Virus record (IMG/VR): IMGVR_UViG_3300032236_001613
Location: 186,001 to 250,000 of that record
Length of the DNA stretch: 64,000 bases
Direction: 5' to 3' (one strand)
The position numbers were made by a program, and so were the translations under genes. The notes beneath the pieces were generated by a model. It was not told the DNA's origin. It worked only from the letters and a program-made list of their open reading frames with translations, and did not search any database. The stretch's first letter is position 1, and every line of letters starts with the position of its first letter. Of the stretch, positions 4,032 through 18,613 are shown in pieces.

Positions 4032-4040
4032 GGAAATACA

Positions 4041-5087: not shown

Positions 5088-5133
5088 AATAAAAAAATCC
5101 AACAAATAAATAAAAGCCAAGAAGGTTTACACA

Positions 5134-6225: not shown

Positions 6226-6545
6226 AAATAGTAAAATTAAAAGATATGAAAGACGGATGGTTTGTCGGCGGATTTCAACCTACAGCGTATTATACTAAGG
6301 ATGTCGAAGTAAATTATAGAATTCATCCTAAAGGGCAACTTTGGGATGTGCATTATCATAGCACTGTTACTGAAATTACTTTACTAATAAAAGGTAAAAT
6401 GATTATTCAAGGTAAAGAATTAACAGGCGGCGATATTTTTATTATCGAACCTTGGGAAATTACCGACCCAGTTTTTCTAGAAGACTGCGAAACTATTTGT
6501 GTTAAATTACCTAGTATAAATGATAAAAAAGTAGTTAAAAGTTAG
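6222..6545 (+). CDS. Cupin-domain protein
   Basis: GWFVGGF, HYH...E, GDIFIIEPWE; overlaps the upstream stop. Confidence 0.75.
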   Translation: MKIVKLKDMKDGWFVGGFQPTAYYTKDVEVNYRIHPKGQLWDVHYHSTVTEITLLIKGKMIIQGKELTGGDIFIIEPWEITDPVFLEDCETICVKLPSINDKKVVKS

Positions 6546-6550
6546 TAAAC

Positions 6551-7678: not shown

Positions 7679-7681
7679 AGG

Positions 7682-7710
7682 TTGACAGCAGAGATAAATA
7701 AACGTATATT
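7682..7710 (+). promoter_or_regulatory. Sigma70-type promoter heading the tRNA array
   Basis: TTGACA-N17-TATATT. Confidence 0.8.
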
Positions 7711-7757
7711 AAATGACTACGATGCAATGCGTAGACGTTAATAAACAAGGAATAAAG

Positions 7758-7898
7758 ATGATTGCAACGACATTTACTACTCATAATAGTAAGACCTTTA
7801 AAGCAGGTTCTATACCCGCTTGGTCGTCAATTATGAATTATTCATATGATCGCGGTCAAGAAGGGAGTCCAAGGTCCGGAAGTGAGATGTTAGAGTAA
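7758..7898 (+). CDS. Putative attenuator leader peptide (46 aa; an in-frame ATG at 7722 is also possible)
   Basis: AAGGA SD before ATG 7758; stop codon lies in the antiterminator loop; 33 distinct codons in 46. Confidence 0.6.
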   Translation: MIATTFTTHNSKTFKAGSIPAWSSIMNYSYDRGQEGSPRSGSEMLE

Positions 7899-7935
7899 CA
7901 ACAAAACATCTAAAAACACTTAAAGGACCCTAGGA
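7868..7935 (+). promoter_or_regulatory. Antiterminator hairpin overlapping the terminator 5' arm
   Basis: GGTCC 7873-77/GGACC 7925-29, AAGTG 7880-84/CACTT 7917-21, AGATGTT 7885-91/AACATCT 7905-11. Confidence 0.65.
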
Positions 7936-7962
7936 TTAAGAACCCTGGGGTTTTTTGTTTTT
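7926..7962 (+). terminator. Intrinsic terminator (attenuator)
   Basis: GACCCTAGG/CCTGGGGTT stem followed by TTTTGTTTTT. Confidence 0.8.
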
Positions 7963-7963
7963 A

Positions 7964-8072
7964 GCAGTGTGAAAATAAGGTAACGAGGACCTTGCAGCGC
8001 ACTATAAACATGCTGTAAACGGGCGGAACCGGGGATCAAACCTGTGGCGAAAACGCAGGGAGTAAAATCCGG
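7964..8072 (+). ncRNA. Unidentified structured RNA
   Basis: Stems AAGGT/ACCTT, GCAGCG/TGCTGT, CCTGTG/CGCAGG, CCGG/CCGG; possible AGTGT/GCACT pseudoknot. Confidence 0.5.
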
Positions 8073-8122
8073 AATTTATATACTAAAGCATACCCAGTGC
8101 AGTGTTCTTTAGTATATAAATT
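8073..8122 (+). promoter_or_regulatory. Long hairpin, candidate RNase III processing site before the first tRNA
   Basis: Perfect 16-bp inverted repeat AATTTATATACTAAAG/CTTTAGTATATAAATT. Confidence 0.5.
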
Positions 8123-8126
8123 AATT

Positions 8127-8211
8127 GGGTAAGCGCCGGAGTGAGAGAGCCGGATTTGACTGTAAATCAAACGTCCCGACTGAGTAGGTGCGAATCCTAC
8201 CTTACCCACCA
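8127..8211 (+). tRNA. tRNA-Tyr(GTA)
   Basis: TTTGA-CTGTAAA-TCAAA, long variable arm, T-loop TGCGAAT, CCA. Confidence 0.9.
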
Positions 8212-8217
8212 AATAAT

Positions 8218-8321
8218 GCGGCAGTAAGTGCGTAATGGGCTAATGGTGGCCAATCCTGTCTACATGGATCAAATGTAACGGTTGCACCTTGATGTAGGTT
8301 CGAATCCTATCTGCTGCACCA
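8218..8321 (+). ncRNA. Atypical 104-nt tRNA-like gene, possible CTA anticodon
   Basis: Acceptor GCGGCAG/CTGCTGC-A-CCA and canonical T arm; irregular D and anticodon region. Confidence 0.6.
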
Positions 8322-8407
8322 CATTGCAACGGTTCTACCATCGTTAATCGGTAGCGCATACTTGGATGCGAGAAAAGACCTTTTACGTCGACCAAGACTA
8401 ATTTTAT

Positions 8408-8485
8408 GCTCCCATAGTTTAGAAGGGCCCAGAACATCCGATTCTCAGTCGGAAAACGCAGGTTCGAATCCTGCCGGGAGCGCCA
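8408..8485 (+). tRNA. tRNA-Glu(CTC)
   Basis: TCCGA-TTCTCAG-TCGGA, CCA. Confidence 0.9.
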
Positions 8486-8529
8486 TTTTACTTAATAAAT
8501 ATTACAAATTTTAAAATAAAGGGTTACTA

Positions 8530-9135
8530 ATGAATATCTCAGATTACAAACAATTTATAAAAGATACAGGCACTTTAATACAAATTGGTGCTTTTGATGG
8601 TGTTGCTTGCGAAGACTCAGGGTTTAGAGAATTAGTACTTTATAAAAATTATAATGCTCATTTGGTTGAACCAGTTATAGATTTTTTTCAGGCGTTACAA
8701 AAAAACTATAGTAATGCTACGAGTAATGTTCGATTTTATAATCAAGCAATTTATACAGAAAATGGAGAATTACCTTTTTTTAAAAATTACACTGACCCAT
8801 TACAATGTACTTTTATAAGAGAAAATGTAGCTGAATATCATGGGCAAACAATACTAGTACAGTCACGAACTTTTGATACTTTTTTACAAGAAAATAACAT
8901 TAATGAAATCGAAGGATTATTTATTGATGCAGAAGGTGCCGAAGATACTATACTCCAACAGCTTTTTGAAAAAACGAATATCAGACCTAATATAATTCGT
9001 TATGAATGGCCACATTTGCCTGACCCTGTAAACACAATCAGATACATTATGTCTTATGGCTATACTGTTTCTCCCTGCATCTATTCAGGCGGTCGTGTTG
9101 ATAACATTTGTATTAAAAACGACCTTTTAGTTTAA
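8530..9135 (+). CDS. FkbM-family methyltransferase
   Basis: IQIGAFDG, LVEP, LFIDAEGAE, IRYE. Confidence 0.8.
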   Translation: MNISDYKQFIKDTGTLIQIGAFDGVACEDSGFRELVLYKNYNAHLVEPVIDFFQALQKNYSNATSNVRFYNQAIYTENGELPFFKNYTDPLQCTFIRENVAEYHGQTILVQSRTFDTFLQENNINEIEGLFIDAEGAEDTILQQLFEKTNIRPNIIRYEWPHLPDPVNTIRYIMSYGYTVSPCIYSGGRVDNICIKNDLLV

Positions 9136-9139
9136 TCTC

Positions 9140-9214
9140 GGTTCCATAGTATATCGGTTAATACATCGGCTTGTCACGTCGAAGTGAGGGGTTCGATTCC
9201 CCTTGGAACCGCCA
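9140..9214 (+). tRNA. tRNA-Asp(GTC)
   Basis: TCGGC-TTGTCAC-GTCGA, G73, CCA. Confidence 0.92.
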
Positions 9215-9219
9215 AATAT

Positions 9220-9295
9220 GCCATCTTAGCTCAGTTGGTAGAGCAGCAGACTGAAAATCTGCGTGTCCCCGGTTCAATTCCGGGAGATGGTACCA
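9220..9295 (+). tRNA. tRNA-Phe(GAA)
   Basis: GCAGA-CTGAAAA-TCTGC, CCA. Confidence 0.95.
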
Positions 9296-9299
9296 GTTA

Positions 9300-10020
9300 T
9301 TATGCCCATCTCCCGTGATCAAAGCTATTGTCAGGGTTTTTAAATTTTCTTAAAGATGATTCTATTCCGGTTACCGGCCACGATATGTGATTTTTATATA
9401 AATGATATATCAACATGTTTTGTGGAGTAAAACACACTCCTTCGGTTGTATATTGATCAATATAATTAAAAACAGACGAATATATGGACATGACATCGCT
9501 ATTGCCTATAGCAAACTGATCGTTTATCCCTGCTCCTTGTCTTTCGGTATCTGGTGTTATTATCATTGGTGTGTTTATACGGTCAAGGTATTCTTTAACT
9601 TTATTTAAAAATATGTAATTATTTAAGCATAAATCTGGCCTTGCTCTAATCACTAAATCATATTTGCCAAACATAGCTTCGTATTTTTGTCTAATATGAC
9701 CAACACGTTGTACGCCATTAAACATATACCAAGCATGAGAGGCCCATGTATGAGTACTATGAGGTCCGCCTAAAATATATGGTTTAGTTTCATCAAATAT
9801 AGGTTCGGGTACAATATCAAAATGAACTACATAATTATTTTTTGGTAAATTATTAACCAATTTAACATAAAACTCATGTTTGTTATTATTCCAACTAGGA
9901 GGAACCCCTTTATCAATGGAATTGTTAGAATTCCAAACATGTATAAACCAATCTAATTGATCATAGATCAAAATCCTTAGTAAACCTCGGTCGACCTGAT
10001 AATTCAATTGCTACTTTCAT
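9300..10020 (-). pseudogene. Frameshifted putative glycosyltransferase-like gene
   Basis: ATG 10020 gives MKVAIELSGRPRFTKDFDL*; the body (YDLVIRARPDL, INDQFAIG) is in another frame. Confidence 0.6.
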
Positions 10021-10045
10021 GCGACTATTTATTGTTAGAGTTTAT

Positions 10046-10122
10046 GGGGCCATAACTCAATAGGCTAGAGTAACTGGCTTTTAACCAGTAAGTTGTGAGT
10101 TCGAGCCTCACTGGCCCTACCA
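10046..10122 (+). tRNA. tRNA-Lys(TTT)
   Basis: ACTGG-CTTTTAA-CCAGT, CCA. Confidence 0.93.
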
Positions 10123-10129
10123 TTTCAAT

Positions 10130-10206
10130 GCCTCCGTAACTCAATGGATCAGAGTGCTTGGCTTCGAACCAAGAAGTTGGGAGTTCGAATCTCTCCGGGG
10201 GCGCCA
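10130..10206 (+). tRNA. tRNA-Arg(TCG)
   Basis: CTTGG-CTTCGAA-CCAAG, CCA. Confidence 0.93.
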
Positions 10207-10261
10207 TATTACGTGATAAGTAAACAGCAGACAGTTTACAGAAACACAAAGGAGATTTTTA

Positions 10262-10843
10262 ATGAATAAGTTTATTGTTTCGATTATTGCCGGACTTGCT
10301 TTTGCGAATCTTGCAGTAGCCGCGGATTATGCTGGTGTTGATTATCAAGATAAGCAGAAGGTCGACGTTGCTGAACAACACGATGTATTTGGTGCTTATA
10401 TTGGACATAAGTTTTCTGACACAGGATTCTCTGTTGAAGGACGCTTAGAAAATGAAATTGTGCATGATCCTAGTAAGCATGAAGGGCTCGTTCAGGTAAA
10501 AGGAACTTATAATGTACCTGCAGCAATTCTAGAAGTTTATCCTTATGTCAGCGCCACAGTTGGCTATAAGAGCGAAGCAACTAGTAATTTTGATTTTTAT
10601 GTTTTAGAAACGGGATTAAAGTATACCCAACTACCTAACGTAGAACTACGTTATGGACTACGTCTACGTACTCCGTTTAACGAAAGTTCGGTAGGCGAAG
10701 GCAACCATTACCGTACAGTAGAAAATAGCATCAACGCCGTTTATAAACTAGACAGTCATAATGGCGTTACTTTAAAATATGCACGTGAGCATGGTGATAG
10801 CAATTATCACACTTACGGTGTTGGTCTAGTACACTCCTTCTAA
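10262..10843 (+). CDS. Outer-membrane beta-barrel (porin-like) protein
   Basis: Signal peptide ending AVA, alternating beta-strand pattern, C-terminal YGVGLVHSF. Confidence 0.7.
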   Translation: MNKFIVSIIAGLAFANLAVAADYAGVDYQDKQKVDVAEQHDVFGAYIGHKFSDTGFSVEGRLENEIVHDPSKHEGLVQVKGTYNVPAAILEVYPYVSATVGYKSEATSNFDFYVLETGLKYTQLPNVELRYGLRLRTPFNESSVGEGNHYRTVENSINAVYKLDSHNGVTLKYAREHGDSNYHTYGVGLVHSF

Positions 10844-10847
10844 TCAT

Positions 10848-11297
10848 ATGGCAATAATTGCAGCCTTATTATGTCTGCTAGGCTGGTTTTTGCCATTAAC
10901 AGATTATCTAACTCCTAAATCAGGAGTAGGTTATTGGATGGGTATAGTAGGAGCGTCCATGATGCTCCTACTTTTAACTTATAGTCTGCGAAAACGTTAT
11001 AAATTCTTAGATTGGTCACCCCCACTTAGTAAGTGGTTTAATGCACACATATTTTTAGGTCTATATGGGCCTTTATTAATCTTATATCATTGCGGCTATC
11101 ATTTAGGTGCTTTTAATAGTAATATGGCTTTATGGTCGATGATTATAGTTGCTATTAGCGGAGTTATAGGTAGATTTTTATATAATCGTCCTCAATTTAA
11201 AAAAGCATTCGCTATTTGGCATGTGGCACATTTGCCTTTTGTTTTTATGTTAGCTGCAGCAGCAGTTATACATATACTTGCAGTAAACATATATTAA
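10848..11297 (+). CDS. His-containing multi-pass membrane protein (possible heme b ligands)
   Basis: Hydrophobic helices with WFNAHIFLG, LYH, WHVAHLP, IH. Confidence 0.55.
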   Translation: MAIIAALLCLLGWFLPLTDYLTPKSGVGYWMGIVGASMMLLLLTYSLRKRYKFLDWSPPLSKWFNAHIFLGLYGPLLILYHCGYHLGAFNSNMALWSMIIVAISGVIGRFLYNRPQFKKAFAIWHVAHLPFVFMLAAAAVIHILAVNIY

Positions 11298-11305
11298 AAA
11301 CGTAT

Positions 11306-11381
11306 GGTGGCTATAGTGTAGAGGTTCGCACACTAGGTTGTGGCCCTGGTAGTAAGGGTTCAATTCCCTTTAGTCACCCCA
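11306..11381 (+). tRNA. tRNA-His(GTG)
   Basis: G-1:C73, CTAGG-TTGTGGC-CCTGG, CCA. Confidence 0.92.
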
Positions 11382-11447
11382 AATTATTTTTATAATTAGT
11401 CTAGGAATATAGATAATTTTCTCTTATAATTATCTATATAATTTTTC

Positions 11448-11537
11448 GGAAGTGTGGCAGAGTCCGGTTTATTGCAACAGTCTTGAAAACTGTCGAGTTT
11501 AATCGCTCCGTAGGTTCGAATCCTACTACTTCCGCCA
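11448..11537 (+). tRNA. tRNA-Ser(TGA)
   Basis: ACAGT-CTTGAAA-ACTGT, long variable arm, G73, CCA. Confidence 0.95.
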
Positions 11538-11541
11538 AATT

Positions 11542-11599
11542 TAGGATGCTTCCAGCAAATAAAAAACTTTTCTTGAAAAAAAGCCAAAACAGCATCCTG
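11542..11599 (+). ncRNA. Anticodon-display RNA copy 1 (TGA stem-loop)
   Basis: AGGATGCT/AGCATCCT closing stem, CAGCAA, internal CTTTT-CTTGAAA-AAAAG. Confidence 0.7.
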
Positions 11600-11609
11600 T
11601 TTAATTTTA

Positions 11610-11704
11610 CCTCGATAGCACAGGTGTGCGGCTAGGTCTTATAAACCTGGGAGAGTTGCCAGATTAGCGACAACGGGAAGGATCGTTACCTTCATCGAGG
11701 ACCA
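11610..11704 (+). tRNA. Non-canonical tRNA with TAT anticodon and long variable arm
   Basis: CCTCGAT/ATCGAGG-A-CCA; 6-bp stem CTAGGT-CTTATAA-ACCTGG; T-loop ATCGTTA. Confidence 0.75.
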
Positions 11705-11712
11705 AATTTTAG

Positions 11713-11741
11713 TTGACTAATTGGTAAATGCGTGTTAAAGT
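11713..11741 (+). promoter_or_regulatory. Sigma70-type promoter with extended -10
   Basis: TTGACT-N17-(TGt)TAAAGT. Confidence 0.6.
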
Positions 11742-11751
11742 ATACGCATAC

Positions 11752-11780
11752 GCTAAGAAATTAGCAACGCTCTTTAATAA
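11752..11780 (+). promoter_or_regulatory. rrn-type boxB/boxA antitermination site
   Basis: GCTAA-GAAA-TTAGC hairpin followed by CGCTCTTTAATAA. Confidence 0.7.
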
Positions 11781-11795
11781 ATGAAAATAGTTTAT

Positions 11796-11871
11796 GGTCC
11801 CATCATCTAGAGGCCTAGGATATTGCCCTTTCACGGCAAGTACACGGGTTCAAATCCCGTTGGGACTACCA
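11796..11871 (+). tRNA. tRNA-Glu(TTC)
   Basis: TTGCC-CTTTCAC-GGCAA, CCA. Confidence 0.93.
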
Positions 11872-11908
11872 TACTTTTTAACTAAATATCTAGCTACGGA
11901 GAAATACT

Positions 11909-12364
11909 ATGAGCTTTCTAGACGTTTTCAAGAAAGAAAAAGACAAGCTAGTTGAAGAAGTTACTAAAGTCGAATCTACTGTTGTCGAAGAAGTAAAGAA
12001 AGTAGAAGCAGTGGCTGAACGAGCTGTTGCTGCTACCGAAGCAGTAGTTAAAGAAGTTGTAGTAGATTTTGAAAAGATTTTAACAGAAGCCGAGCAGGCA
12101 GCAGAAAGAACTCTACGCGATGTAGAGTTAGCTCGCCAGTTATACGAAAAAGCACTGGCTAGAGCAAATCTAGCAGCTAATAGAGCTAGAGAAGCTGCTG
12201 AACAAGCAGCAGCAAAAGCCCAAGAAGAAGCTGAAAGAGCCTTGTTGAGAGCTGAACGTGCTGCTAAGTTAGTGATTGGTATTTCAGGATCGGCGCCAGC
12301 TCCGGTTATTGCGCCTCCACCAATCGCTCCTGCTCCACCCCCTACAAGTAATACTACTCAATAA
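11909..12364 (+). CDS. Ala/Glu-rich coiled-coil protein with Pro-rich tail
   Basis: Composition; GGAG SD. Confidence 0.6.
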   Translation: MSFLDVFKKEKDKLVEEVTKVESTVVEEVKKVEAVAERAVAATEAVVKEVVVDFEKILTEAEQAAERTLRDVELARQLYEKALARANLAANRAREAAEQAAAKAQEEAERALLRAERAAKLVIGISGSAPAPVIAPPPIAPAPPPTSNTTQ

Positions 12365-12366
12365 TT

Positions 12367-12442
12367 AGTAGTGTAGCATAGTGGCTAATGCAGCACCTTC
12401 ATACGGTGTTTACCATCGGTTCGAGTCCGATCACTACTACCA
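12367..12442 (+). tRNA. tRNA-CAT (elongator Met or Ile2)
   Basis: GCACC-TTCATAC-GGTGT, paired 1:72, CCA. Confidence 0.88.
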
Positions 12443-12446
12443 GTTT

Positions 12447-12561
12447 TAGGATACCTACAGCAACATAAATTACTCATGCTAAGAGAGAGGTCGTTGGTTC
12501 AAGTCCAACCTAGTCTTAGGACTAGTAGCTCAGTTGGTAGAGCACTAAAATGTGTATCCTG
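12447..12561 (+). ncRNA. Anticodon-display RNA copy 2 containing a circularly permuted tRNA (GCT loop)
   Basis: AGGATAC/GTATCCT closing stem; order is anticodon loop, variable loop, T arm, loop-closed acceptor stem, D arm. Confidence 0.8.
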
Positions 12562-12570
12562 TTTTATTCG

Positions 12571-12648
12571 GCACCGGTGGCAGAGTGGCCCAATGCAAGA
12601 GTCTGCAAAACTCTAAAGTCGTCAGTTCGAATCTGACCCGGTGCTCCA
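12571..12648 (+). tRNA. tRNA-Cys(GCA)
   Basis: AGAGT-CTGCAAA-ACTCT, U73, CCA. Confidence 0.93.
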
Positions 12649-12697
12649 ATATACTTGTATAATAGATAACAAACATATATAATATATGAAATTATAC

Positions 12698-12773
12698 GGC
12701 CTCGTAGCCTAGTGGATCAGGCAACAGCCTTCTAAGCTGTCTTACACAGGTTCGAATCCTGTCGAGGTCGCCA
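12698..12773 (+). tRNA. tRNA-Arg(TCT)
   Basis: ACAGC-CTTCTAA-GCTGT, CCA. Confidence 0.93.
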
Positions 12774-12824
12774 AATTAATTAGTTTGACATCTTAATAAA
12801 GATAAGTAATAATATATCAACAAC

Positions 12825-12898
12825 GCGGAATTGGCATATGGGTTGTGCTCCAGCCTTCCAAGCTGGCTAAACGAGTTCGAGTCTCGTATTCCGCTCCA
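12825..12898 (+). tRNA. tRNA-Gly(TCC)
   Basis: CCAGC-CTTCCAA-GCTGG, U73, CCA; TTGACA at 12785 upstream. Confidence 0.93.
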
Positions 12899-12915
12899 AC
12901 TTTTAAGAGGCTCTA

Positions 12916-13134
12916 ATGAATAATCTCGGTGAATTAAGAGATTACGCTGTTGCTCGAGGATATAAAATCAAAGAGTTTAACGGATATGCACTACATATTG
13001 GGCGTGATACTTATACTATGTTAGCTGGAGAAATTTATCTCAATAAGATTAAAACTCCTACTAAAGAAGTTTTAAAGAAATTTACAGAAAAGTCTGCTGC
13101 AAAAAAAACTGCAGCAACAGCAAAGAAAAAATAG
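12916..13134 (+). CDS. Hypothetical basic protein
   Basis: ORF with GAGG SD. Confidence 0.55.
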   Translation: MNNLGELRDYAVARGYKIKEFNGYALHIGRDTYTMLAGEIYLNKIKTPTKEVLKKFTEKSAAKKTAATAKKK

Positions 13135-13140
13135 TTTTGT

Positions 13141-13221
13141 GCCCTAATGGTGAAATTGGTAGACACGCAAGATTTAGGTTCTTGTCTTCGGGTGGGGGTT
13201 CGAGTCCCTCTTAGGGCACCA
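13141..13221 (+). tRNA. tRNA-Leu(TAG)
   Basis: CAAGA-TTTAGGT-TCTTG, short variable arm, A73, CCA. Confidence 0.92.
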
Positions 13222-13228
13222 ATAGTTT

Positions 13229-13289
13229 TAGGATGCCTACAGCAAATTTAAAAATCAAAATGTCAATTTGAAAACAAATGCGCATCCTG
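13229..13289 (+). ncRNA. Anticodon-display RNA copy 3 (GTC stem-loop)
   Basis: AGGATGC/GCATCCT closing stem, CTACAGCAA, internal TCAAA-ATGTCAA-TTTGA. Confidence 0.7.
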
Positions 13290-13298
13290 TTTAAATAT

Positions 13299-13372
13299 GC
13301 CGGTGTAGTATAATGATAGTGCGACGGTCTCCAAAACCGTTAGTGGGAGTTTGATTCTCTCCACCGGTGCCA
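13299..13372 (+). tRNA. tRNA-Trp(CCA)
   Basis: ACGGT-CTCCAAA-ACCGT, CCA. Confidence 0.92.
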
Positions 13373-13384
13373 AATCGAGGACTT

Positions 13385-13699
13385 ATGACAAAAAAATTTA
13401 CATTTAATGATTTACAACCTAGAGTTGAAATGCTAATCGATGCTCTAGAAAATCGTGGCGCTTGTGCTAGCGGCTTACCATATGCTCCGGGCGTTAAAGC
13501 AGTTGCTGAAAACTATAAGTCAATGTTAGATTTTATAAGAAATAAAACAATTAACAAAGACGATCTCATCAACAGTTTATCAACAGCTAAAGCACTTGTA
13601 TTAGAACGAGCAGGTGGTAATCAAATTGATAGAATACGTAAAATTCTAGATGCTCTTGACTCCTATATGATGAGAGAGTATAATAAACAGAACAGTTGA
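13385..13699 (+). CDS. Hypothetical protein
   Basis: GAGG SD before ATG 13385. Confidence 0.55.
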   Translation: MTKKFTFNDLQPRVEMLIDALENRGACASGLPYAPGVKAVAENYKSMLDFIRNKTINKDDLINSLSTAKALVLERAGGNQIDRIRKILDALDSYMMREYNKQNS

Positions 13700-13721
13700 C
13701 CCTTCGTCTAGCGGTAGGACA
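13697..13721 (+). pseudogene. 5' remnant of a tRNA-Gln-like gene
   Basis: TGACCCT-TC-GTCT-AGCGGT-AGGAC-A: acceptor 5' strand plus Gln-type D arm, no 3' half. Confidence 0.65.
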
Positions 13722-13735
13722 AATATAAATACTAT

Positions 13736-14278
13736 ATGCTTAGTAAAAATATTAGTTCAGAGACAATCGAAAAATTAATTGATTCAGGTTTAAAAACCTC
13801 AGAAATTGCATCTAAGCTCGGTATCTCTACTGCAACAGTTTCTTATTGGAAAAAGAAACTCGGAAAAGAACTTAGTAATATCAAACATGATTGGAAAAAA
13901 ATTCAAGAAGCCCACAACAATGGGTCTACTTATTCTCAATTATACAAAGAGTTTGGTGTTACTAAAAGATCATTACAGAAAGCTAGAGATCGAGGAGATT
14001 TCAAGGTTAGACAGCGTAAAAAATTGTCAAAAGATGACGCTAAAATTAGAAAAAGAATTATATGCAGAGAAGCGTGGATGCGGTATTATAGTAGAAAAAA
14101 ATATCAAACTCCGGCTGATGAAGATATTAAAAAATTACAAGAATTTTATGCTAATTGCCCGGTTGGTTATGAAGTAGATCACATCATACCTATAAGTAAA
14201 GGCGGATTACATACATTGTCGAATCTTCAATACTTAACTATTAAAGAGAATAGACAAAAAGGTAATAAGATATTATAA
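13736..14278 (+). CDS. HTH-HNH homing endonuclease
   Basis: N-terminal SEIASKLGISTATVSYW; YEVDHIIPISKGGLHTLSNLQYLTIKENRQK. Confidence 0.88.
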   Translation: MLSKNISSETIEKLIDSGLKTSEIASKLGISTATVSYWKKKLGKELSNIKHDWKKIQEAHNNGSTYSQLYKEFGVTKRSLQKARDRGDFKVRQRKKLSKDDAKIRKRIICREAWMRYYSRKKYQTPADEDIKKLQEFYANCPVGYEVDHIIPISKGGLHTLSNLQYLTIKENRQKGNKIL

Positions 14279-14289
14279 TTTAACACTAT

Positions 14290-14363
14290 TGGGGAATCTT
14301 CTAACGGCAGGAAGGCGGACTTTGACTCCGCTAATCTAGGTTCGAATCCTAGTTCCCCAGCCA
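14290..14363 (+). tRNA. tRNA-Gln(TTG)
   Basis: GCGGA-CTTTGAC-TCCGC, U1:A72, CCA. Confidence 0.93.
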
Positions 14364-14369
14364 ATTTTT

Positions 14370-14443
14370 GCCCGATTAGCTCAAAAGTAGAGCGCACGAC
14401 TGATAATCGTAAGACAAAGGAGCGTTACCTTTATTGGGCACCA
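14370..14443 (+). tRNA. tRNA-Ile(GAT) with atypical D and T loops
   Basis: CACGA-CTGATAA-TCGTA; T-loop AGCGTTA; CCA. Confidence 0.85.
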
Positions 14444-14459
14444 TATAAATAAAGACAAT

Positions 14460-14535
14460 TGGAGTGTAGCTCAGCGGCAGTAGCGTTCGCCTGTTAAGCG
14501 AATGGTCGTAGGTTCGATCCCTACCACTCCAGCCA
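14460..14535 (+). tRNA. tRNA-Asn(GTT)
   Basis: TTCGC-CTGTTAA-GCGAA, CCA. Confidence 0.92.
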
Positions 14536-14543
14536 AATTTTAG

Positions 14544-14572
14544 TTGACCATTTTCGAAATGTTCAATATAAT
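14544..14572 (+). promoter_or_regulatory. Sigma70-type promoter
   Basis: TTGACC-N17-TATAAT. Confidence 0.7.
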
Positions 14573-14601
14573 ATATTCAAGTTAGTAAATAGTTTCGCGT
14601 T

Positions 14602-14675
14602 GGGGGATTGATGTAGTGATAGCCTGGGACCCTTGCACGGTCTTCGCGAGAGTTTGATTCTCTCATCCTCCACCA
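14602..14675 (+). tRNA. tRNA-Ala(TGC)
   Basis: G3:U70, GGACC-CTTGCAC-GGTCT, CCA. Confidence 0.9.
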
Positions 14676-14683
14676 AAGTTTGA

Positions 14684-14757
14684 TGCAGGGTAGTAGAACG
14701 GAACTACGCTAGGCTCATAACCTAGAGAACTTGGTTCGACTCCAAGCTCTGCTTCCA
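14684..14757 (+). tRNA. tRNA-Met(CAT), initiator-like
   Basis: 1:72 mismatch, CTAGG-CTCATAA-CCTAG, CCA. Confidence 0.85.
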
Positions 14758-14766
14758 GTTTGAAAC

Positions 14767-14854
14767 GGATGGTTGCCTGAGCGGTTAAAGGAGCGGGTTG
14801 CTAACCCGTCGCGGTGAAAACTGCGCATAGGTTCGAATCCTATACCATCCGCCA
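14767..14854 (+). tRNA. tRNA-Ser(GCT)
   Basis: GCGGG-TTGCTAA-CCCGT, long variable arm, CCA. Confidence 0.94.
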
Positions 14855-14876
14855 ATTTGTTATATAGAGGAATAAA

Positions 14877-15092
14877 ATGCAAGAGTATAAGCCGACCGGT
14901 AGTTATCGTATGTCACGTCAAGCCAAGCAGATGTTATCTAGGATCCAGGATCCTATTGAGAGAACTGAAGCAAAACGTTTAATTATTCAAAGTGAGTTGC
15001 ATCTTCAGTTGACTCCTAAGCGTAATCCGCTTGATAAGGATCGCACAACTAAAAATAGTCGCAATAATAAAGACGACTCGTTAGAAGAGTAA
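14877..15092 (+). CDS. Hypothetical protein
   Basis: GAGGA SD. Confidence 0.55.
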   Translation: MQEYKPTGSYRMSRQAKQMLSRIQDPIERTEAKRLIIQSELHLQLTPKRNPLDKDRTTKNSRNNKDDSLEE

Positions 15093-15102
15093 ATAAAGTT
15101 AG

Positions 15103-15178
15103 GCCTTCTAAGCATTGCTGGCGATGCACCGGATTTGTAACCCGGGGATAGTCTGTTCGATTCAGACAGAAGGCACCA
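15103..15178 (+). tRNA. tRNA-Thr(TGT)
   Basis: GCCTTCT/AGAAGGC acceptor, loop TTTGTAA, CCA. Confidence 0.85.
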
Positions 15179-15182
15179 GTTT

Positions 15183-15286
15183 AGACGGACCTGTAACCAT
15201 ATTCCGTCTCCGCCGGAGCGAAAACAGGATGGGCTGCTGCCGCGGGGTTTGACTGTTTCCTGACACACAAATAACAGTCATGTGTT
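15183..15286 (+). ncRNA. Pseudoknotted structured RNA between tRNAs
   Basis: AGACGGA/TCCGTCT with CCTGT/ACAGG; GACTGTT/AACAGTC with ACACA/TGTGT. Confidence 0.6.
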
Positions 15287-15289
15287 TAT

Positions 15290-15364
15290 GCCCGGTTAGC
15301 TCAGGGGTAGAGCGTCTGGTTTACATCCAGAATGTCGGCGGTTCGAAACCGTCACCGGGTACCA
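15290..15364 (+). tRNA. tRNA-Val(TAC)
   Basis: TCTGG-TTTACAT-CCAGA, CCA. Confidence 0.94.
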
Positions 15365-15378
15365 GTTTAGTAAGGTCA

Positions 15379-15454
15379 CGGGGTGTAGCTCAGTCTGGTT
15401 TAGAGCGTCCGCTTTGGGAGCGGAAGGTCCAAAGTTCGAATCTTTGTACCCCGA
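15379..15454 (+). tRNA. tRNA-Pro(TGG), no encoded CCA
   Basis: TCCGC-TTTGGGA-GCGGA, C1:G72, followed by AAAA. Confidence 0.9.
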
Positions 15455-15469
15455 AAAATTAAATTTACA

Positions 15470-15901
15470 ATGAAAATAAAAATTACAGATCAAGATCCTG
15501 ACCGTCATAATCACATAGAATATCCTATGGAGATTGGAGGTCAGGCTTTTGCACCTGTAAAAATCGAAAAAGAAAAAGATCTTATGCTAGCTGTCGCACA
15601 ACTTAGCGCACAGCAAGAATATGATCGCATCATGGAATCTGTTTCTATATTACAACGGCAAGCACAAGCACTACAAAGAAGAATGCATTTAACAGAGATG
15701 GTACATGCTGCTAAGTTTAGTTTTGTGCCAATTCCGGGTAAAAGTTATTGGTTAGTCGAAGATACTAAAAAATCTCAAATTATTTTAACCCCAATGGGTC
15801 CATCAGATTGGAGTTGTTTGGCGCCTGAAGAATATAAGTATGTTGCATATGTACGTTGTTTAGGCGATCAAACCTGGCAAGAAATTATAGAGCCCGATTA
15901 G
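15470..15901 (+). CDS. Conserved hypothetical protein (DUF2452-like)
   Basis: YPMEIG..AFAP, AKFSFVPIPGKSYWL, MGPSDW, DQTW. Confidence 0.6.
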   Translation: MKIKITDQDPDRHNHIEYPMEIGGQAFAPVKIEKEKDLMLAVAQLSAQQEYDRIMESVSILQRQAQALQRRMHLTEMVHAAKFSFVPIPGKSYWLVEDTKKSQIILTPMGPSDWSCLAPEEYKYVAYVRCLGDQTWQEIIEPD

Positions 15902-15968
15902 CTCAGTTGGTAGTAGCAACTGATTAGTAATCAGTAGGTCGGCGGTTCGAATCCGTCATCGGGCACCA
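15892..15968 (+). tRNA. tRNA-Thr(AGT)
   Basis: ACTGA-TTAGTAA-TCAGT, CCA; overlaps the upstream CDS end. Confidence 0.9.
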
Positions 15969-16004
15969 TATAAGAAAGATATATACATTTAAGGAGACCA
16001 TATA

Positions 16005-16250
16005 ATGAGTAAAGGAAGTAGAACTAGACCATTGTCGGTCACTAGAAAAACGTTCGATAGTAATTGGGATCGAATTTTTGGAAAAAAGGAATATGATATG
16101 CAAATTAAAGTAAAAGAAGGATCCTTAGGCAGTTGTCCTTGCGGACGCAGTCCGATTAATCGCTGTGTTGGATGGCACAATCTCAACGAAGAGCAGTTAG
16201 CCAAAGCAAAGGCCGATTATGCAGCTAAAGAAGCAAAGAAAACTGCATGA
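16005..16250 (+). CDS. CDGSH-like iron-sulfur domain protein
   Basis: CPCGRSPINRCVGWH. Confidence 0.65.
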   Translation: MSKGSRTRPLSVTRKTFDSNWDRIFGKKEYDMQIKVKEGSLGSCPCGRSPINRCVGWHNLNEEQLAKAKADYAAKEAKKTA

Positions 16251-16651
16251 TAGAAAAAGTTGTAGTTAACGGCACGTTTGATATACTGCACTTAGGGCAT
16301 ATTAGACTTTTAGAATATGCTCGTGAGCTTGGATGGTATTTACTTGTCTTAATTGATTCAGATCGTAGAGTACAAGAACTTAAAGGCCCTACACGGCCGG
16401 TTAACAATCAAGAAGAAAGAGCCGAAATGCTTCGTGCTATTAAGTATGTTGACGAAGTGCAAATTTTTGACAGTGATGATGAATTAAGAAACCTTATTAA
16501 AGAATATCAGCCGGATTTTATGGTTAAAGGTAGTGATTACAGAAATCGTCCTATTATAGGTAGCGAATATTGTAAGGAAATTAAGTTTTATGAGTATATG
16601 GAAGGCTATTCGACCACAAAAAAAATATCAAGTATTATTGATAGGCGATAG
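16247..16651 (+). CDS. ADP-heptose synthase adenylyltransferase domain (RfaE/HldE domain II)
   Basis: NGTFDILHLGH, LKGPTRP, VKGSDY, YSTT. Confidence 0.9.
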   Translation: MIEKVVVNGTFDILHLGHIRLLEYARELGWYLLVLIDSDRRVQELKGPTRPVNNQEERAEMLRAIKYVDEVQIFDSDDELRNLIKEYQPDFMVKGSDYRNRPIIGSEYCKEIKFYEYMEGYSTTKKISSIIDRR

Positions 16652-17384
16652 TTGTACTGACGTTTATCAATACGGAACTGTGGATAGAATTAGTCCAGAA
16701 GCACCTGTACCTATTTTTAAACATAGTCATACAGAAACTAGGCCAGGAATGGCAGCAAACGTACAGTTGAATCTTGAATCGTTTGGAATCGAAGTTACAG
16801 CATTGCTAGGGCCTGGATCAGTAAAGACTAGGCTAGTTGATCTTCGTAGTCGGCAACATGTTCTTAGAATCGATGATGATGCTAACGCCACTCCTATGTT
16901 ATTCGATTCTAAACTTGATCTAACACACTATCATGCGGTAGTGTTTAGTGATTACAATAAAGGATGGGTTAGTTACGAATTAGTTGAAGTAGTACGACAA
17001 AAGTTCGGTGGACCAATTTTTATTGATACTAAAAAACAAGATCTAGCAAAATTTTGGGACTGTTATGTTAAAGTTAACGAAACTGAGTACAATAACAGAT
17101 GGTCTATCAATAATAAATTAATTGTTACATTAGGTAATCGAGGTGCAGTTTATAAAGAACTTGGTCGCAAAGAAGTAGAATTTCCACCAGACACAGTCGA
17201 GGTAGTAGATGTATGTGGTGCTGGAGACACATTTTTAGCAGCCATAGTTGCAGAATACTTAAATAGTAGAGATATTAATAGTGCAATAAAGTTTGCTAAC
17301 CATGCTAGTGCTATAAGTGTACAGCATAGCGGAGTTTATGCATTAACTCGAGAAGATATTAAGAAGATTAAAAAGCGGGTATGA
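16590..17384 (+). CDS. Heptose-7-phosphate kinase domain (RfaE/HldE domain I, PfkB family)
   Basis: RISPEAPVP, SDYNKG, DVCGAGDTF. Confidence 0.9.
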   Translation: MSIWKAIRPQKKYQVLLIGDSCTDVYQYGTVDRISPEAPVPIFKHSHTETRPGMAANVQLNLESFGIEVTALLGPGSVKTRLVDLRSRQHVLRIDDDANATPMLFDSKLDLTHYHAVVFSDYNKGWVSYELVEVVRQKFGGPIFIDTKKQDLAKFWDCYVKVNETEYNNRWSINNKLIVTLGNRGAVYKELGRKEVEFPPDTVEVVDVCGAGDTFLAAIVAEYLNSRDINSAIKFANHASAISVQHSGVYALTREDIKKIKKRV

Positions 17385-17397
17385 TGTAATCGAACCT
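17375..17397 (+). pseudogene. 5' remnant of a tRNA-Gly-like gene
   Basis: GCGGGTA-TG-ATGT-AATCG-AACCT with no 3' half. Confidence 0.5.
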
Positions 17398-17431
17398 TTG
17401 ACTTATATAAATAAGTATATAGGAGTACGAT

Positions 17432-17914
17432 ATGAAATATTGCCCGAAGTGTAATAATGAACATAATAAACCTGGAATGTTTTGCTCAAGATCATGTGCA
17501 AATAGTCGTGTTTGGTCAGAAGAGACCAATTTAAAAAGATCAATAACATCAAAGGGTAATTCCCCGTGGAATAAAGGTATATCCACCGGAATTAACGAAG
17601 AAAGAAATAAAGTTATACGATTAGTTCGATTGGAAAAAAATAGAAATAAATTTTTAAACGGGTTGATAACCGAAAGATCGGCAATAAGGAAACATCTTAC
17701 AAGAGAACATGGTTATTTCTGTTCTATTTGTTCTATTTCAGAATGGCAAGGACAAAAAATTACATTACAAGTAGATCATATAGATGGAAACGCAGGAAAC
17801 AATTTACCTACAAATCTAAGATTAATTTGTCCGAATTGTCATAGTCAAACTAAAACATTTGGAGCAAGAAATAAAGGTTCAGGAAGAGCATCTAGAGGTC
17901 TTCCGTTAAGTTAA
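17432..17914 (+). CDS. HNH homing endonuclease with N-terminal zinc finger
   Basis: CPKC..FCSRSC, PWNKG, LQVDHIDGNAGNNLPTNLRLICPNCH. Confidence 0.9.
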   Translation: MKYCPKCNNEHNKPGMFCSRSCANSRVWSEETNLKRSITSKGNSPWNKGISTGINEERNKVIRLVRLEKNRNKFLNGLITERSAIRKHLTREHGYFCSICSISEWQGQKITLQVDHIDGNAGNNLPTNLRLICPNCHSQTKTFGARNKGSGRASRGLPLS

Positions 17915-17924
17915 ATAATATATC

Positions 17925-17999
17925 GCGGGATTAATTCAGTGGTAGAATGCAACTTTGCCAAAGTTGATGTCACCGGTTCGAGCCCGGTATCCCGCTCCA
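17925..17999 (+). tRNA. tRNA-Gly(GCC)
   Basis: CAACT-TTGCCAA-AGTTG, U73, CCA. Confidence 0.94.
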
Positions 18000-18014
18000 A
18001 CTTATAGGTGATTA

Positions 18015-18374
18015 ATGACACGATTAGAAGGATATGTTGAAAAAGGTTGGGGACATGAGTTAATTTGGGCCACCAACGACAAATACTGTGGTAAAATGAT
18101 GAAATTTAACAAGGATGCTAAATTCAGTATGCATTTCCACAGTGATAAAGACGAAACTTGGTATATTCTTGAAGGAAAATTTCTAGTAAGATGGATTGAT
18201 ACCAAGACTGCTAAAGTAAATGGAAAAGAATTAAATGCCGGTGATGTCTGGCACAATCCTCCATTACTACCGCACCAAGTATTATGTATGGAAGCAGGCA
18301 CTATTATTGAAGTTTCAACTCCGGATAGTGTTGAAGATAATTATCGAGTATTGCCTGGCGACAGTCAACGTTGA
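18015..18374 (+). CDS. Cupin (sugar isomerase-like) protein
   Basis: KGWGHE, SMHFH..KDETWY, PH, IEVSTPD. Confidence 0.8.
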   Translation: MTRLEGYVEKGWGHELIWATNDKYCGKMMKFNKDAKFSMHFHSDKDETWYILEGKFLVRWIDTKTAKVNGKELNAGDVWHNPPLLPHQVLCMEAGTIIEVSTPDSVEDNYRVLPGDSQR

Positions 18375-18380
18375 TCTTAG

Positions 18381-18412
18381 GGTCTACTATTTTAAGTAGT
18401 AGACCTTTTTTT
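18381..18412 (+). terminator. Intrinsic terminator
   Basis: GGTCTACTAT/GTAGTAGACC followed by T7. Confidence 0.85.
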
Positions 18413-18454
18413 ATGACTATTTTTTCTTAAATACTAAAATATTAAGGAATCCTT

Positions 18455-18613
18455 ATGACTAATCCGATTAATCCCGCACGTATTGCAACAGCTAAGAAAA
18501 AATCAAGATGTATGAAATCTAAAAACGGGAACCATCAATGGAAAGAAGTTGGTGAAATCCCTGGAGCACAGCAACAATGCGACTATTGTAATATTATCAT
18601 TAATTGGAAATAA
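18455..18613 (+). CDS. Small 52-aa putative zinc-binding protein (absent from the ORF track)
   Basis: AAGGA SD; C..H-W..CDYC pattern. Confidence 0.5.
   Translation: MTNPINPARIATAKKKSRCMKSKNGNHQWKEVGEIPGAQQQCDYCNIIINWK

What the first reader, a model, noticed from the sequence alone, without database searches (positions are those of the whole stretch)
17375..17999. Second, unrelated HNH with the same remnant-HNH-replacement layout at tRNA-Gly
Seen: GCGGGTATGATGTAATCG..., resembling a Gly tRNA 5' end and supplying the kinase stop codon, then TATAAATA, a zinc-finger HNH and an intact tRNA-Gly(GCC) starting GCGGGAT. Two independent cases suggest a general strategy. In both, the remnant overlaps the upstream gene's stop codon, which may explain why it is retained. 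The remnant is short, so its identity is less certain.
Basis: partly seen in the sequence, partly recalled or inferred. Interest (0 to 1): 0.65.

Follow-up and report, generated by a model that had tools for sequence, protein, structure and literature searches.

The report
HNH endonuclease cassette beside a tRNA-Gly stump
A selfish HNH nuclease gene in an uncultured 328-kb lake phage sits between a genuine 24-base stump of one glycine tRNA gene and the phage's only intact copy of that tRNA, a layout that recurs at other tRNAs and in other phages.

Summary
Window 17375-17398 is a real 5' fragment (acceptor arm plus D arm) of a widespread phage tRNA-Gly(GCC) family. Its first 16 bases are the exact 5' end of 113 intact tRNA-Gly genes in IMG/VR. 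Every HNH-free relative that keeps a tRNA here has an intact tRNA-Gly(GCC) starting at the homologous base, overlapping the kinase stop codon. These are L002/L228, L225/L226 and a contig joint in an independent lake metagenome.

Window 17375-17924 (stump, TATAAATA, Shine-Dalgarno, HNH ORF) is an insertion/deletion polymorphism. In an independent sample 17387-17954 is about 99.5% identical, while the flanking genes are only 85-92% identical. That is the signature of a moving homing-endonuclease cassette.

The layout recurs:
- at tRNA-Gln in this window;
- at tRNA-Val in the sister phage, where this window is the HNH-free allele;
- in four more HNH loci;
- once with a GIY-YIG enzyme.

The stop-codon idea does not explain retention, because most stumps follow another tRNA. 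It is undecided whether the stump is the resident gene's relic or baggage that came with the cassette. This is a new variant of a known kind (SegB and phage T5 F-Tfl endonucleases in tRNA clusters).

The parts
16590..17384 (+). PfkB-family sugar kinase ORF. Its last three codons and stop (AAG CGG GTA TGA) are encoded by the tRNA stump.
   Evidence: C-termini of relatives.
17375..17398 (+). 5' stump of an 'A-type' phage tRNA-Gly(GCC): acceptor 5' strand plus D arm, tRNA positions 1-24. Weaker similarity may continue to about 17405.
   Evidence: The 16-mer is the exact 5' end of 113 intact tRNA-Gly genes. An intact tRNA sits at the same place in L002, L228, L225 and L226.
17389..17431 (+). Predicted interrupted hairpin. 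AUCG.ACCUU (17389-17398, inside the stump) pairs with AGG.AG..CGAU (17421-17431, the Shine-Dalgarno and the bases before the AUG). TATAAATA lies in the loop. The hairpin is weak in this window.
   Evidence: Fold -15.3 kcal/mol, z -2.19. A duplex test gave z about 0 for the window, but 27 of 40 relatives had dG <= -8 with covarying arms.
17406..17413 (+). TATAAATA, a T4-type late-promoter-like element 18 nt upstream of the HNH start.
   Evidence: Genome-wide, 19 of 25 copies are intergenic and 16 lie within 60 nt of a same-strand ORF start.
17432..17914 (+). Freestanding HNH endonuclease gene (160 aa) with a Cys4 finger and an HNH domain.
   Evidence: Pfam and PHROGs. Invariant catalytic and zinc residues. 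80 relatives, all in tRNA-containing loci.
17375..17924 (+). The 550-bp segment that is present or absent between alleles (stump + promoter + HNH), flanked by a GCGGG direct repeat.
   Evidence: X2 contig joint 17374->17925, 5 bases shared. Homology with L225/L226 stops at 17371 and resumes at 17925.
17925..17999 (+). Intact tRNA-Gly(GCC), 'C-type' allele. It is the only tRNA-Gly(GCC) in the 328-kb genome.
   Evidence: It is 74% identical to the L225 allele.
18000..18014 (+). tRNA-cupin spacer ACTTATAGGTGATTA, which carries the cupin Shine-Dalgarno. It is homologous to the spacer in L227.
18015..18374 (+). Cupin gene. In about 35 more distant relatives it, or another gene, starts at the kinase stop (ATGA overlap) with no tRNA between.
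13697..13721 (+). Case 1: 5' stump (25 nt) of a tRNA-Gln(TTG). Its first three bases are the stop of ORF 13367-13699.
13724..14278 (+). Case 1: TATAAATA (13724-13731) and an HTH-HNH endonuclease ORF (13736-14278).
14290..14363 (+). Case 1: intact tRNA-Gln(TTG) of a different allele. It is the only one in the genome.
15290..15364 (+). tRNA-Val(TAC), an HNH-free allele. The sister phage L226 has a 20-nt Val stump, an HNH gene and a different intact tRNA-Val here.
15892..15968 (+). tRNA-Thr(AGT), an HNH-free allele. L225 has an HNH gene inserted exactly at its 5' end. The two tRNA alleles differ only at 6 positions (23-43).

Best explanation
Window 17375-17924 is a freestanding HNH homing-endonuclease cassette lodged at the 5' edge of the phage's tRNA-Gly(GCC) gene.

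Its left border is a real 24-nt stump of another tRNA-Gly(GCC) allele (type A). The most likely origin of such stumps is as follows.
1. The endonuclease cuts or nicks an HNH-free tRNA gene in the D-stem / anticodon-stem region (inferred).
2. The break is repaired from a donor in which the HNH gene lies just upstream of a tRNA of the same anticodon.
3. When donor and recipient share only the tRNA as homology, the right end copies the donor's tRNA 5' part, HNH gene and promoter.
4. The left end, which is the recipient's tRNA up to the break, is joined illegitimately.
5. The product is stump - promoter - HNH - complete tRNA.

Once formed, the whole block, stump included, spreads among related phages by ordinary homing.

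Expression probably follows the T4 scheme. A TATAAATA late promoter lies inside a hairpin that occludes the Shine-Dalgarno in read-through transcripts. The hairpin's upstream arm lies in, or derives from, the tRNA D-arm fragment.

Shown here: stump identity, insertion/deletion polymorphism, recent horizontal spread, recurrence, and promoter/hairpin architecture in relatives.

Inferred: the cleavage site, the repair route and the timing of expression.
For: Stump identity and synteny:
- 113 of 121 exact 16-mer hits are 5' ends of intact tRNA-Gly genes.
- An intact tRNA-Gly(GCC) starts at the homologous base in L002/L228 (type A) and in L225/L226 (type B; kinase 84%, cupin 95% aa identity).

Mobility:
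- Homology with L225/L226 breaks at 17371 and resumes at 17925.
- Run X2 holds an HNH-free joint 17374->17925.
- Run X2 also holds a contig over 17387-17954 with 3 differences, while its kinase and cupin contigs are 85-92% identical.

Recurrence:
- 7 of 67 unique HNH-family loci have a 5'-anchored tRNA fragment within 110 nt upstream of the start, against 1 of 670 control segments (Fisher p 2.8e-7).
- In 5 of the 7, a Gly fragment is paired with an intact tRNA-Gly(GCC) 1-11 nt after the HNH stop.
- Across the survey (aligned ends 16-28) and the cases read by eye (L226, L071), the stumps end at about tRNA positions 20-31.
- L226 against the window at tRNA-Val has flanks 95% and 91% identical. 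The stump is 17/20 like the HNH-free allele and the intact tRNA only 14/20.
- HNH-1 relatives L292/L293 have a Gln stump, an HNH gene and tRNA-Gln.
- A GIY-YIG/NUMOD3 gene sits behind the same A-type stump.

Family link to tRNAs:
- 55 of 66 loci have a same-strand tRNA within 150 nt.
- Gly(GCC) makes up 24% of adjacent tRNAs against 6% of all tRNAs in those loci (p 7e-7).

Candidate target:
- The tRNA-Thr(AGT) alleles of the window (HNH-free) and L225 (HNH+) differ only at 6 positions, 23-43, with compensatory anticodon-stem changes.

Regulation:
- NATAAATA lies 17-32 nt before the start in 40 of 67 loci.
- The hairpin arms covary: GGTAGAG/CTCTACC, GTAGACCT/AGGTCTAC, GGTTAAGG/CTTTAACC.
- TATAAATA is intergenic in 19 of 25 genome copies.
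- The scheme is known for I-TevI-III, segB and mobE (PMC2988022).

The catalytic residues are intact.
Against: - No cleavage data exist. The target site is inferred from stump ends and from one pair of tRNA-Thr alleles.
- Stump ends scatter over tRNA positions 20-31 rather than falling at one point.
- In X2 an HNH-free allele already carries a C-like tRNA at the kinase stop.
- 11 other C-type tRNAs in IMG/VR have no HNH upstream.
- So at this locus the intact tRNA may be the resident and no replacement need have occurred.
- The hairpin is weak in the window itself (duplex -5.5 kcal/mol, z about 0; whole fold z -2.2). Case 1 has none.
- 3' stumps are not enriched (3 of 67 against 12 of 670).
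- The closest full relatives are only about 82% identical in DNA.
- The tRNA library used in the survey is enriched for the very families searched.
Confidence: 0.6

Rival explanations
1. The stump is baggage; there was no replacement at this locus. The resident gene at the kinase stop was always the C-type tRNA-Gly. A cassette that already carried an A-type 5' fragment, picked up at an earlier site and kept as the upstream hairpin arm, inserted exactly at the tRNA's 5' end.
For: - Run X2 holds an HNH-free allele with a C-like tRNA directly after the kinase. The tRNA unitig depth (19.3) is close to the sum of the HNH+ (9.3) and HNH- (7.7) contigs.
- C-type tRNAs are common and not HNH-linked.
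- C is closer than A to the sister phage's B allele.
- L225 shows insertion exactly at a tRNA 5' end without a stump.
- In L071 the hairpin's 3' arm is matched to the stump sequence.
- Other cassettes carry collapsed GCGGTAGAG-like pieces next to the promoter.
Against: - An A-type tRNA occupies this very locus in L002/L228, with the same AAG CGG GTA TGA kinase ending.
- At tRNA-Val in L226 the stump resembles the HNH-free resident allele more than the intact copy does.
- The HNH-free C allele could itself arise by partial co-conversion, or by deletion between the GCGGG repeats.
Confidence: 0.35
2. The stump is retained because it supplies the upstream gene's stop codon.
For: Both stumps in the window contain the stop codon of the upstream ORF. 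L227 keeps the 5' 23 nt of a dead tRNA at the kinase stop.
Against: - Only 10 of the 24 stump bases are needed for the kinase.
- Stumps in L071, L045, L036, L223 and L226 follow a tRNA or a spacer, with no ORF to terminate.
- Any nearby in-frame stop would serve.
- In L225 the cassette's own promoter (ATAAATAA) supplies the stop.
Confidence: 0.08
3. The resemblance is chance or an assembly artefact. The sequence is just the kinase 3' end and a spacer.
For: The piece is short. Rfam's tRNA model gives no hit at E<=1.
Against: - The 16-nt exact match is specific to tRNA-Gly 5' ends.
- Intact tRNAs lie at the syntenic position.
- About 35 relatives without a tRNA end the kinase differently (EEIx*, ATGA overlap).
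- Independent contigs in X2 and X4 carry the junction.
Confidence: 0.02
4. The stump and the downstream sequence are the two exons of one interrupted tRNA (an intron carrying an endonuclease ORF).
For: Endonuclease ORFs in group I introns of tRNA genes are known in bacteria (own knowledge). L054 has a 5' piece before and a 3' piece after the HNH gene.
Against: - The downstream tRNA is complete by itself.
- The stump acceptor GCGGGTA does not pair with the downstream 3' strand ATCCCGC.
- No group I intron family was reported by Rfam in 7600-18600.
Confidence: 0.02

Closest known systems
Phage T4 SegB (GIY-YIG freestanding homing endonuclease in the tRNA gene cluster; PMC2330249, PMC13096335)
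   Same: - It is a freestanding endonuclease gene inside a phage tRNA cluster.
- It recognises a conserved tRNA-gene motif.
- It drives preferential inheritance of itself and neighbouring tRNA genes.
- SegB homologues are statistically associated with tRNAs.
- T4 segB also has the late promoter and RBS hairpin (PMC2988022).
   Different: - The enzyme here is HNH with a Cys4 finger, not GIY-YIG.
[quoted passage not shown]
- A tRNA 5' stump followed by a full same-anticodon tRNA was not found described for SegB in my searches.
Phage T5 F-TflI, F-TflII, F-TflIV (endonucleases encoded in the T5 tRNA region; Akulenko et al. 2004, as cited in PMC2330249)
   Same: Their ORFs lie in a phage tRNA gene cluster (PMC2330249). 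That they are HNH enzymes is my own recollection.
   Different: No sequence comparison was made here. Their relation to tRNA stumps is unknown to me, and the primary paper is not in the held library.
T4 I-TevI/II/III and Aeh1 mobE expression control (late promoter inside an RBS-sequestering hairpin; PMC2988022)
   Same: TATAAATA lies between two complementary arms, and the 3' arm covers the Shine-Dalgarno and start. The arms covary across relatives.
   Different: The upstream arm here is a tRNA D-arm fragment or a D-loop-like GGTAGAG. The hairpin is weak in this window. Nothing has been tested experimentally.
Endonuclease gene plus foreign gene end replacing a resident gene end and leaving a pseudogene piece (Allomyces mitochondrial atp6; recalled from memory, Paquin et al. 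1994)
   Same: A mobile endonuclease gene arrives with a functional copy of part or all of the target gene, and a non-functional resident piece remains beside it.
   Different: That case is a protein-coding gene in an organelle with a 3' end replacement. Here it is a whole tRNA with a 5' stump in phages. It is a recollection only and was not checked here.
Integrase-mediated insertion into tRNA genes (attP carrying a tRNA 3' end)
   Same: A mobile element restores a functional tRNA and leaves a partial tRNA copy at its other border.
   Different: There is no integrase here. The duplicated part is the 5' end and differs in sequence from the intact gene. The element is about 550 bp with only a nuclease gene.

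Membership tests
HNH (His-Me finger) endonuclease | Beta-beta-alpha-metal motif with a catalytic His (DH), conserved Asn residues and, in this subtype, two CxxC zinc pairs. | tested here: met
   Pfam HNH 23.8 bits against a cut-off of 21.4. phrog_10822, E 1.8e-26. C97, C100, H116, N123, N128, C133, C136 and H137 are invariant in 9 relatives.
Freestanding homing endonuclease gene | Presence/absence polymorphism between otherwise collinear genomes, at a fixed site. | tested here: met
   L225/L226 and the X2 joint lack 17375-17924. L225/L226 carry related HNH genes at tRNA-Val and tRNA-Thr where the window has none.
Freestanding homing endonuclease gene | Evidence of horizontal spread: the element is much more similar between genomes than its flanks are. 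| tested here: met
   The X2 contig over 17387-17954 has 3 differences in 568 nt, while its kinase and cupin contigs are 85-92% identical. This comes from contigs of one sample and is not phased.
Freestanding homing endonuclease gene | Site-specific cleavage of the endonuclease-free allele and resistance of the endonuclease-bearing allele. | not testable with these tools
   There is indirect evidence only. Stump ends fall at tRNA positions 20-31. The tRNA-Thr alleles differ only at positions 23-43.
Freestanding homing endonuclease gene | Super-Mendelian inheritance in mixed infection. | not testable with these tools
   The phage is uncultured.
tRNA gene (for the 17375-17398 piece) | A complete cloverleaf recognised by tRNA finders. 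| tested here: not met
   There is no ARAGORN or Rfam call. Only positions 1-24 are present, so it is a fragment and not a gene.
T4-type late-promoter / RBS-hairpin control | A TATAAATA box inside a hairpin whose 3' arm covers the Shine-Dalgarno or start. | tested here: inconclusive
   It is clear in relatives (27 of 40 with dG <= -8, covarying arms). It is weak in the window. The promoter role is inferred from the intergenic bias of TATAAATA.
SegB family (GIY-YIG) | A GIY-YIG catalytic domain. | tested here: not met
   The window protein has only HNH matches. A GIY-YIG/NUMOD3 enzyme occupies the same layout in L223.

The most novel reading that the evidence does not exclude
These cassettes may be a tRNA-allele swapping drive. 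Each endonuclease lineage would travel with, or beside, a tRNA allele whose D-stem / anticodon-stem differs from the alleles it cuts. Phage tRNA genes would then be overwritten again and again: A, B and C types occur at one kinase locus, and compensatory anticodon-stem changes occur in tRNA-Thr. The tRNA fragment left behind is then re-used as the regulatory hairpin arm of the cassette. The resulting tRNA diversity could also help phages escape host nucleases that cut tRNAs, as was recently shown for SegB-amplified tRNA-Tyr.
Probability: 0.15. Interest if true: 0.8.

Novelty: new variant of a known kind. Interest (0 to 1): 0.55.

Why it matters
Endonuclease genes in phage tRNA clusters are known, but what they do to the tRNA genes themselves is poorly documented.

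These data show three tRNA-Gly(GCC) alleles at one conserved position in related phages. They also show stumps that mark past invasions and a block that has moved recently between diverged lake phages.

This gives a concrete, testable picture of how selfish nucleases remodel phage tRNA sets. It suggests where the enzymes cut. It also offers tRNA 5' stumps as a simple genomic marker for finding such events.

For annotators there are two practical lessons. Short tRNA-like pieces upstream of endonuclease genes are real relics. In this phage, ORF ends often lie inside tRNA genes.

Tried and rejected
- A megablast of 16200-18400 against GenBank phages found nothing. Distant blastn hit only tRNA and HNH pieces of jumbo phages such as CBB, GAP32 and XbC2.
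- Rfam at E<=1 gives no partial tRNA hit at either stump.
- The relatives search for ORF 13367-13699 gave one 41% relative, followed by a tRNA-Ser. It is uninformative for case 1.
- The 3'-stump survey showed no enrichment (3 of 67 against 12 of 670).
- I tested whether the C-type tRNA is cassette-borne. All 11 other C-type tRNAs lack an upstream HNH, so that idea gained no support.
- The split-tRNA / intron reading was rejected, because the acceptor strands do not match and the downstream gene is complete.
- Chance and misassembly were rejected.
- The hairpin in the window is not significant in the duplex test.
- PDB sequence search gave only weak matches: McrA (E 0.0025) and I-HmuI (E 0.019).
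- Literature searches for truncated, partial or remnant tRNA together with homing endonuclease found no description of this layout. The held library is incomplete, so this is not proof of novelty.
- No structure prediction, complex prediction or large protein search was run. None was needed.
Full report
**Context**

The window is bases 186001-250000 of a 328-kb IMG/VR virus record. It is an uncultured jumbo phage found in freshwater and lake metagenomes. Positions 8.1-18 kb hold a cluster of 25 ARAGORN tRNA genes interspersed with small ORFs. The finding lies at the right end of that cluster.

**Observation**

- The PfkB kinase ORF (16590-17384) ends AAG CGG GTA TGA. GCGGGTATGA... starts at 17375.
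- TATAAATA is at 17406-17413 and AGGAG at 17421-17425.
- The HNH ORF is 17432-17914 (Pfam HNH; phrog_10822, E 1.8e-26). It has an N-terminal Cys4 finger and an intact CxxC/DH/N/CPNCH set, invariant in nine relatives.
- tRNA-Gly(GCC) is 17925-17999. It is the only tRNA-Gly(GCC) in the genome.
- The other HNH gene of the window (13736-14278, HTH + HNH) shows no pairwise similarity to this one.

**Is the short piece a tRNA remnant?**

Yes.
- The 16-mer at 17375-17390 is unique in the genome.
- In IMG/VR it has at least 119 exact occurrences. Of the 121 examined, 113 are the first 16 bases of an intact tRNA-Gly, 99 with anticodon GCC.
- Against the consensus of that 'A-type' family the window matches to tRNA position 24, with one substitution, one polymorphic site and one missing base. 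It then decays.

Synteny gives the same answer.
- In L002/L228 (kinase 57% identical) an intact A-type tRNA-Gly(GCC) starts at the same GCGG and gives the kinase the same ending, K-R-V-stop.
- In the closest relatives L225/L226 (ctp 90%, kinase 84%, cupin 95% aa identity) an intact but different 'B-type' tRNA-Gly(GCC) starts at the same base. The kinase there ends AAG CGG AAA TAG.
- L227 (kinase 78%) has an internally deleted tRNA there. It is followed by the same 15-nt spacer and cupin start as window 18000-18017.
- About 35 more distant relatives have no tRNA. Their kinase ends EEIx and its TGA overlaps the next gene's ATG.

**The cassette is mobile**

- DNA homology with L225/L226 runs to 17371 and resumes at 17925. 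The tRNA itself is only 74% identical.
- In an independent lake metagenome (X2) one contig joins 17374 directly to 17925, with GCGGG shared on both sides.
- Another X2 contig covers 17387-17954 with 3 differences.
- A third X2 contig equals the tRNA (17925-18000) exactly.
- The X2 kinase and cupin contigs are only 85-92% identical to the window.
- A second independent run (X4) bridges 17252-17431.
- X1, the likely source sample, spans everything but does not count as independent.

Thus 17375-17924 is an insertion/deletion polymorphism that has moved recently between diverged phages.

**The layout is general**

- Case 1 of the window: 13697-13721 is a 25/25 match to the 5' end of phage tRNA-Gln(TTG) genes. 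It begins with the stop of ORF 13367-13699 and is followed by TATAAATA, the HTH-HNH gene and the genome's only tRNA-Gln(TTG), of another allele.
- The relatives L292/L293 (67% identical) have a different Gln stump, the HNH gene and a tRNA-Gln.
- The sister phage L226 has, between flanks 95% and 91% identical to the window:
  - the first 20 nt of a tRNA-Val;
  - a hairpin and promoter;
  - an HNH gene;
  - a different intact tRNA-Val(TAC).
- The window has just one tRNA-Val starting at the same base.
- L225 has another HNH gene exactly at the 5' end of tRNA-Thr(AGT) without a stump. The two Thr alleles differ only at six positions, 23-43, with compensatory anticodon-stem changes.
- L223/L224/L117 have the same A-type Gly stump, TATAAATA and a 287-aa GIY-YIG/NUMOD3 ORF running into an intact tRNA-Gly(GCC).

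Survey of the HNH family (80 loci, 67 unique):
- All 80 loci contain tRNAs, and 55 of the 66 unique loci other than the window have a same-strand tRNA within 150 nt.
- Gly(GCC) is 24% of adjacent tRNAs against 6% overall (p 7e-7).
- Seven loci have a 5'-anchored tRNA fragment within 110 nt upstream of the start, against 1 of 670 controls (p 2.8e-7).
- The fragments' aligned parts end at tRNA positions 16-28.
- 3' fragments are not enriched, though L031 and L054 have clear ones.

**Regulation**

- In 40 of 67 loci, NATAAATA lies 17-32 nt before the start.
- In 27 of those, the sequence just 5' of it pairs (dG <= -8) with the sequence just before the ATG.
- The arms covary: GGTAGAG/CTCTACC, GTAGACCT/AGGTCTAC, GGTTAAGG/CTTTAACC.
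- In L071 and L036 the upstream arm lies in the tRNA stump.
- This is the T4 arrangement described for I-TevI-III, segB and mobE (PMC2988022).
- In the window, AUCG.ACCUU of the stump pairs with the Shine-Dalgarno region. Support is weak: fold z -2.2, duplex z about 0.
- TATAAATA behaves as a promoter-like signal in this phage. Of 25 copies, 19 are intergenic in a roughly 90% coding genome and 16 precede a same-strand ORF.

**Mechanism**

The best-supported reading is a tRNA-gene-targeting homing endonuclease. Stumps would arise when a cut tRNA is repaired from a donor that shares only the tRNA as homology. The block then spreads by ordinary homing.

Stump ends, and the Thr allele differences, point to the D-stem / anticodon-stem as the target. 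This is inference, because no cleavage data exist.

Whether this particular stump is the relic of a resident A-type tRNA or came with the cassette cannot be decided.
- For a resident relic: an A-type tRNA sits at this locus in L002, and the Val case points the same way.
- For baggage: X2 has an HNH-free allele with a C-like tRNA, C-type tRNAs elsewhere lack an HNH gene, and some cassettes carry old collapsed fragments.

Stop-codon supply does not explain retention. Most stumps follow a tRNA or a spacer.

**Comparison and novelty**

The closest known systems are:
- T4 SegB (GIY-YIG, targets the T-psi-C motif, drives inheritance of the tRNA region; PMC2330249), with its tRNA association and segmental amplification (PMC13096335);
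- the T5 F-Tfl endonucleases in the tRNA cluster (cited in PMC2330249).

The stump-endonuclease-same-anticodon-tRNA layout, its recurrence across enzyme families, and the re-use of the stump as a hairpin arm were not found in the held literature.

I class it as a new variant of a known kind, with interest 0.55.

Noticed in passing
window 12463-12572 (+): Rfam YrlA (Y RNA-like) match of 44 bits, below the gathering score of 69. The stretch contains tRNA-like halves between tRNA-Met and tRNA-Cys.
   Followed up: no
window 8127-8208 and 14370-14440 (+): Rfam tRNA hits (42 and 54.5 bits) that ARAGORN did not call. By eye they are a Tyr-like tRNA with a long variable arm and an Ile(GAT)-like tRNA.
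   Followed up: no
window 8218-8325 (+): A sequence of about 105 nt with tRNA-like ends (GCGGCAG ... GGTTCGAATCC ... CTGCTGCACCA) called by neither tool. It may be an interrupted or degenerate tRNA.
   Followed up: no
window 11544-11599 and 13231-13289 (+): Repeated spacer elements (TTTAGGATGC ... GCATCCTGTTTAA) between tRNAs. They give spurious sub-threshold Rfam hits and may be processing or terminator hairpins.
   Followed up: no
G000 genome-wide; window 2876, 2896, 13724, 14444, 17406, 48570: TATAAATA is intergenic in 19 of 25 genome copies, and 16 have a same-strand ORF start within 60 nt. This suggests T4-type late promoters in this uncultured jumbo phage.
   Followed up: partly
L227:855-895 (Ga0163203_1061110): A tRNA-Gly at the kinase stop with an internal deletion that starts at about tRNA position 23, the same region where the stumps end. 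It could be a repair scar or an assembly error in a 1.1-kb contig.
   Followed up: partly
window 15470-15968; L225:1-640: The DUF2452 ORF ends inside tRNA-Thr(AGT). In L225 an HNH cassette sits between them, its ATAAATAA supplies the ORF stop, and the HNH ORF in turn ends K-P-D-stop inside the tRNA.
   Followed up: yes
window 16247-18374 and 2904-9135: A sugar-nucleotide gene set is embedded in and around the tRNA cluster: cytidylyltransferase-like, PfkB kinase, cupin and several methyltransferases including an FkbM type. The ctp-kinase-cupin trio is conserved in more than 60 related contigs.
   Followed up: partly
window 17510-17626 (HNH residues about 27-65): A 39-residue insert (..WSEETNLKRSITSKGNSPWNKG..) is absent from eight aligned relatives. 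It looks NUMOD3-like by eye only, with no Pfam hit.
   Followed up: no
L117, L223, L224, L236: ARAGORN calls tRNAs with anticodon CTA ('tRNA-Pyl', i.e. amber-reading suppressor-like) in several related phage contigs.
   Followed up: no
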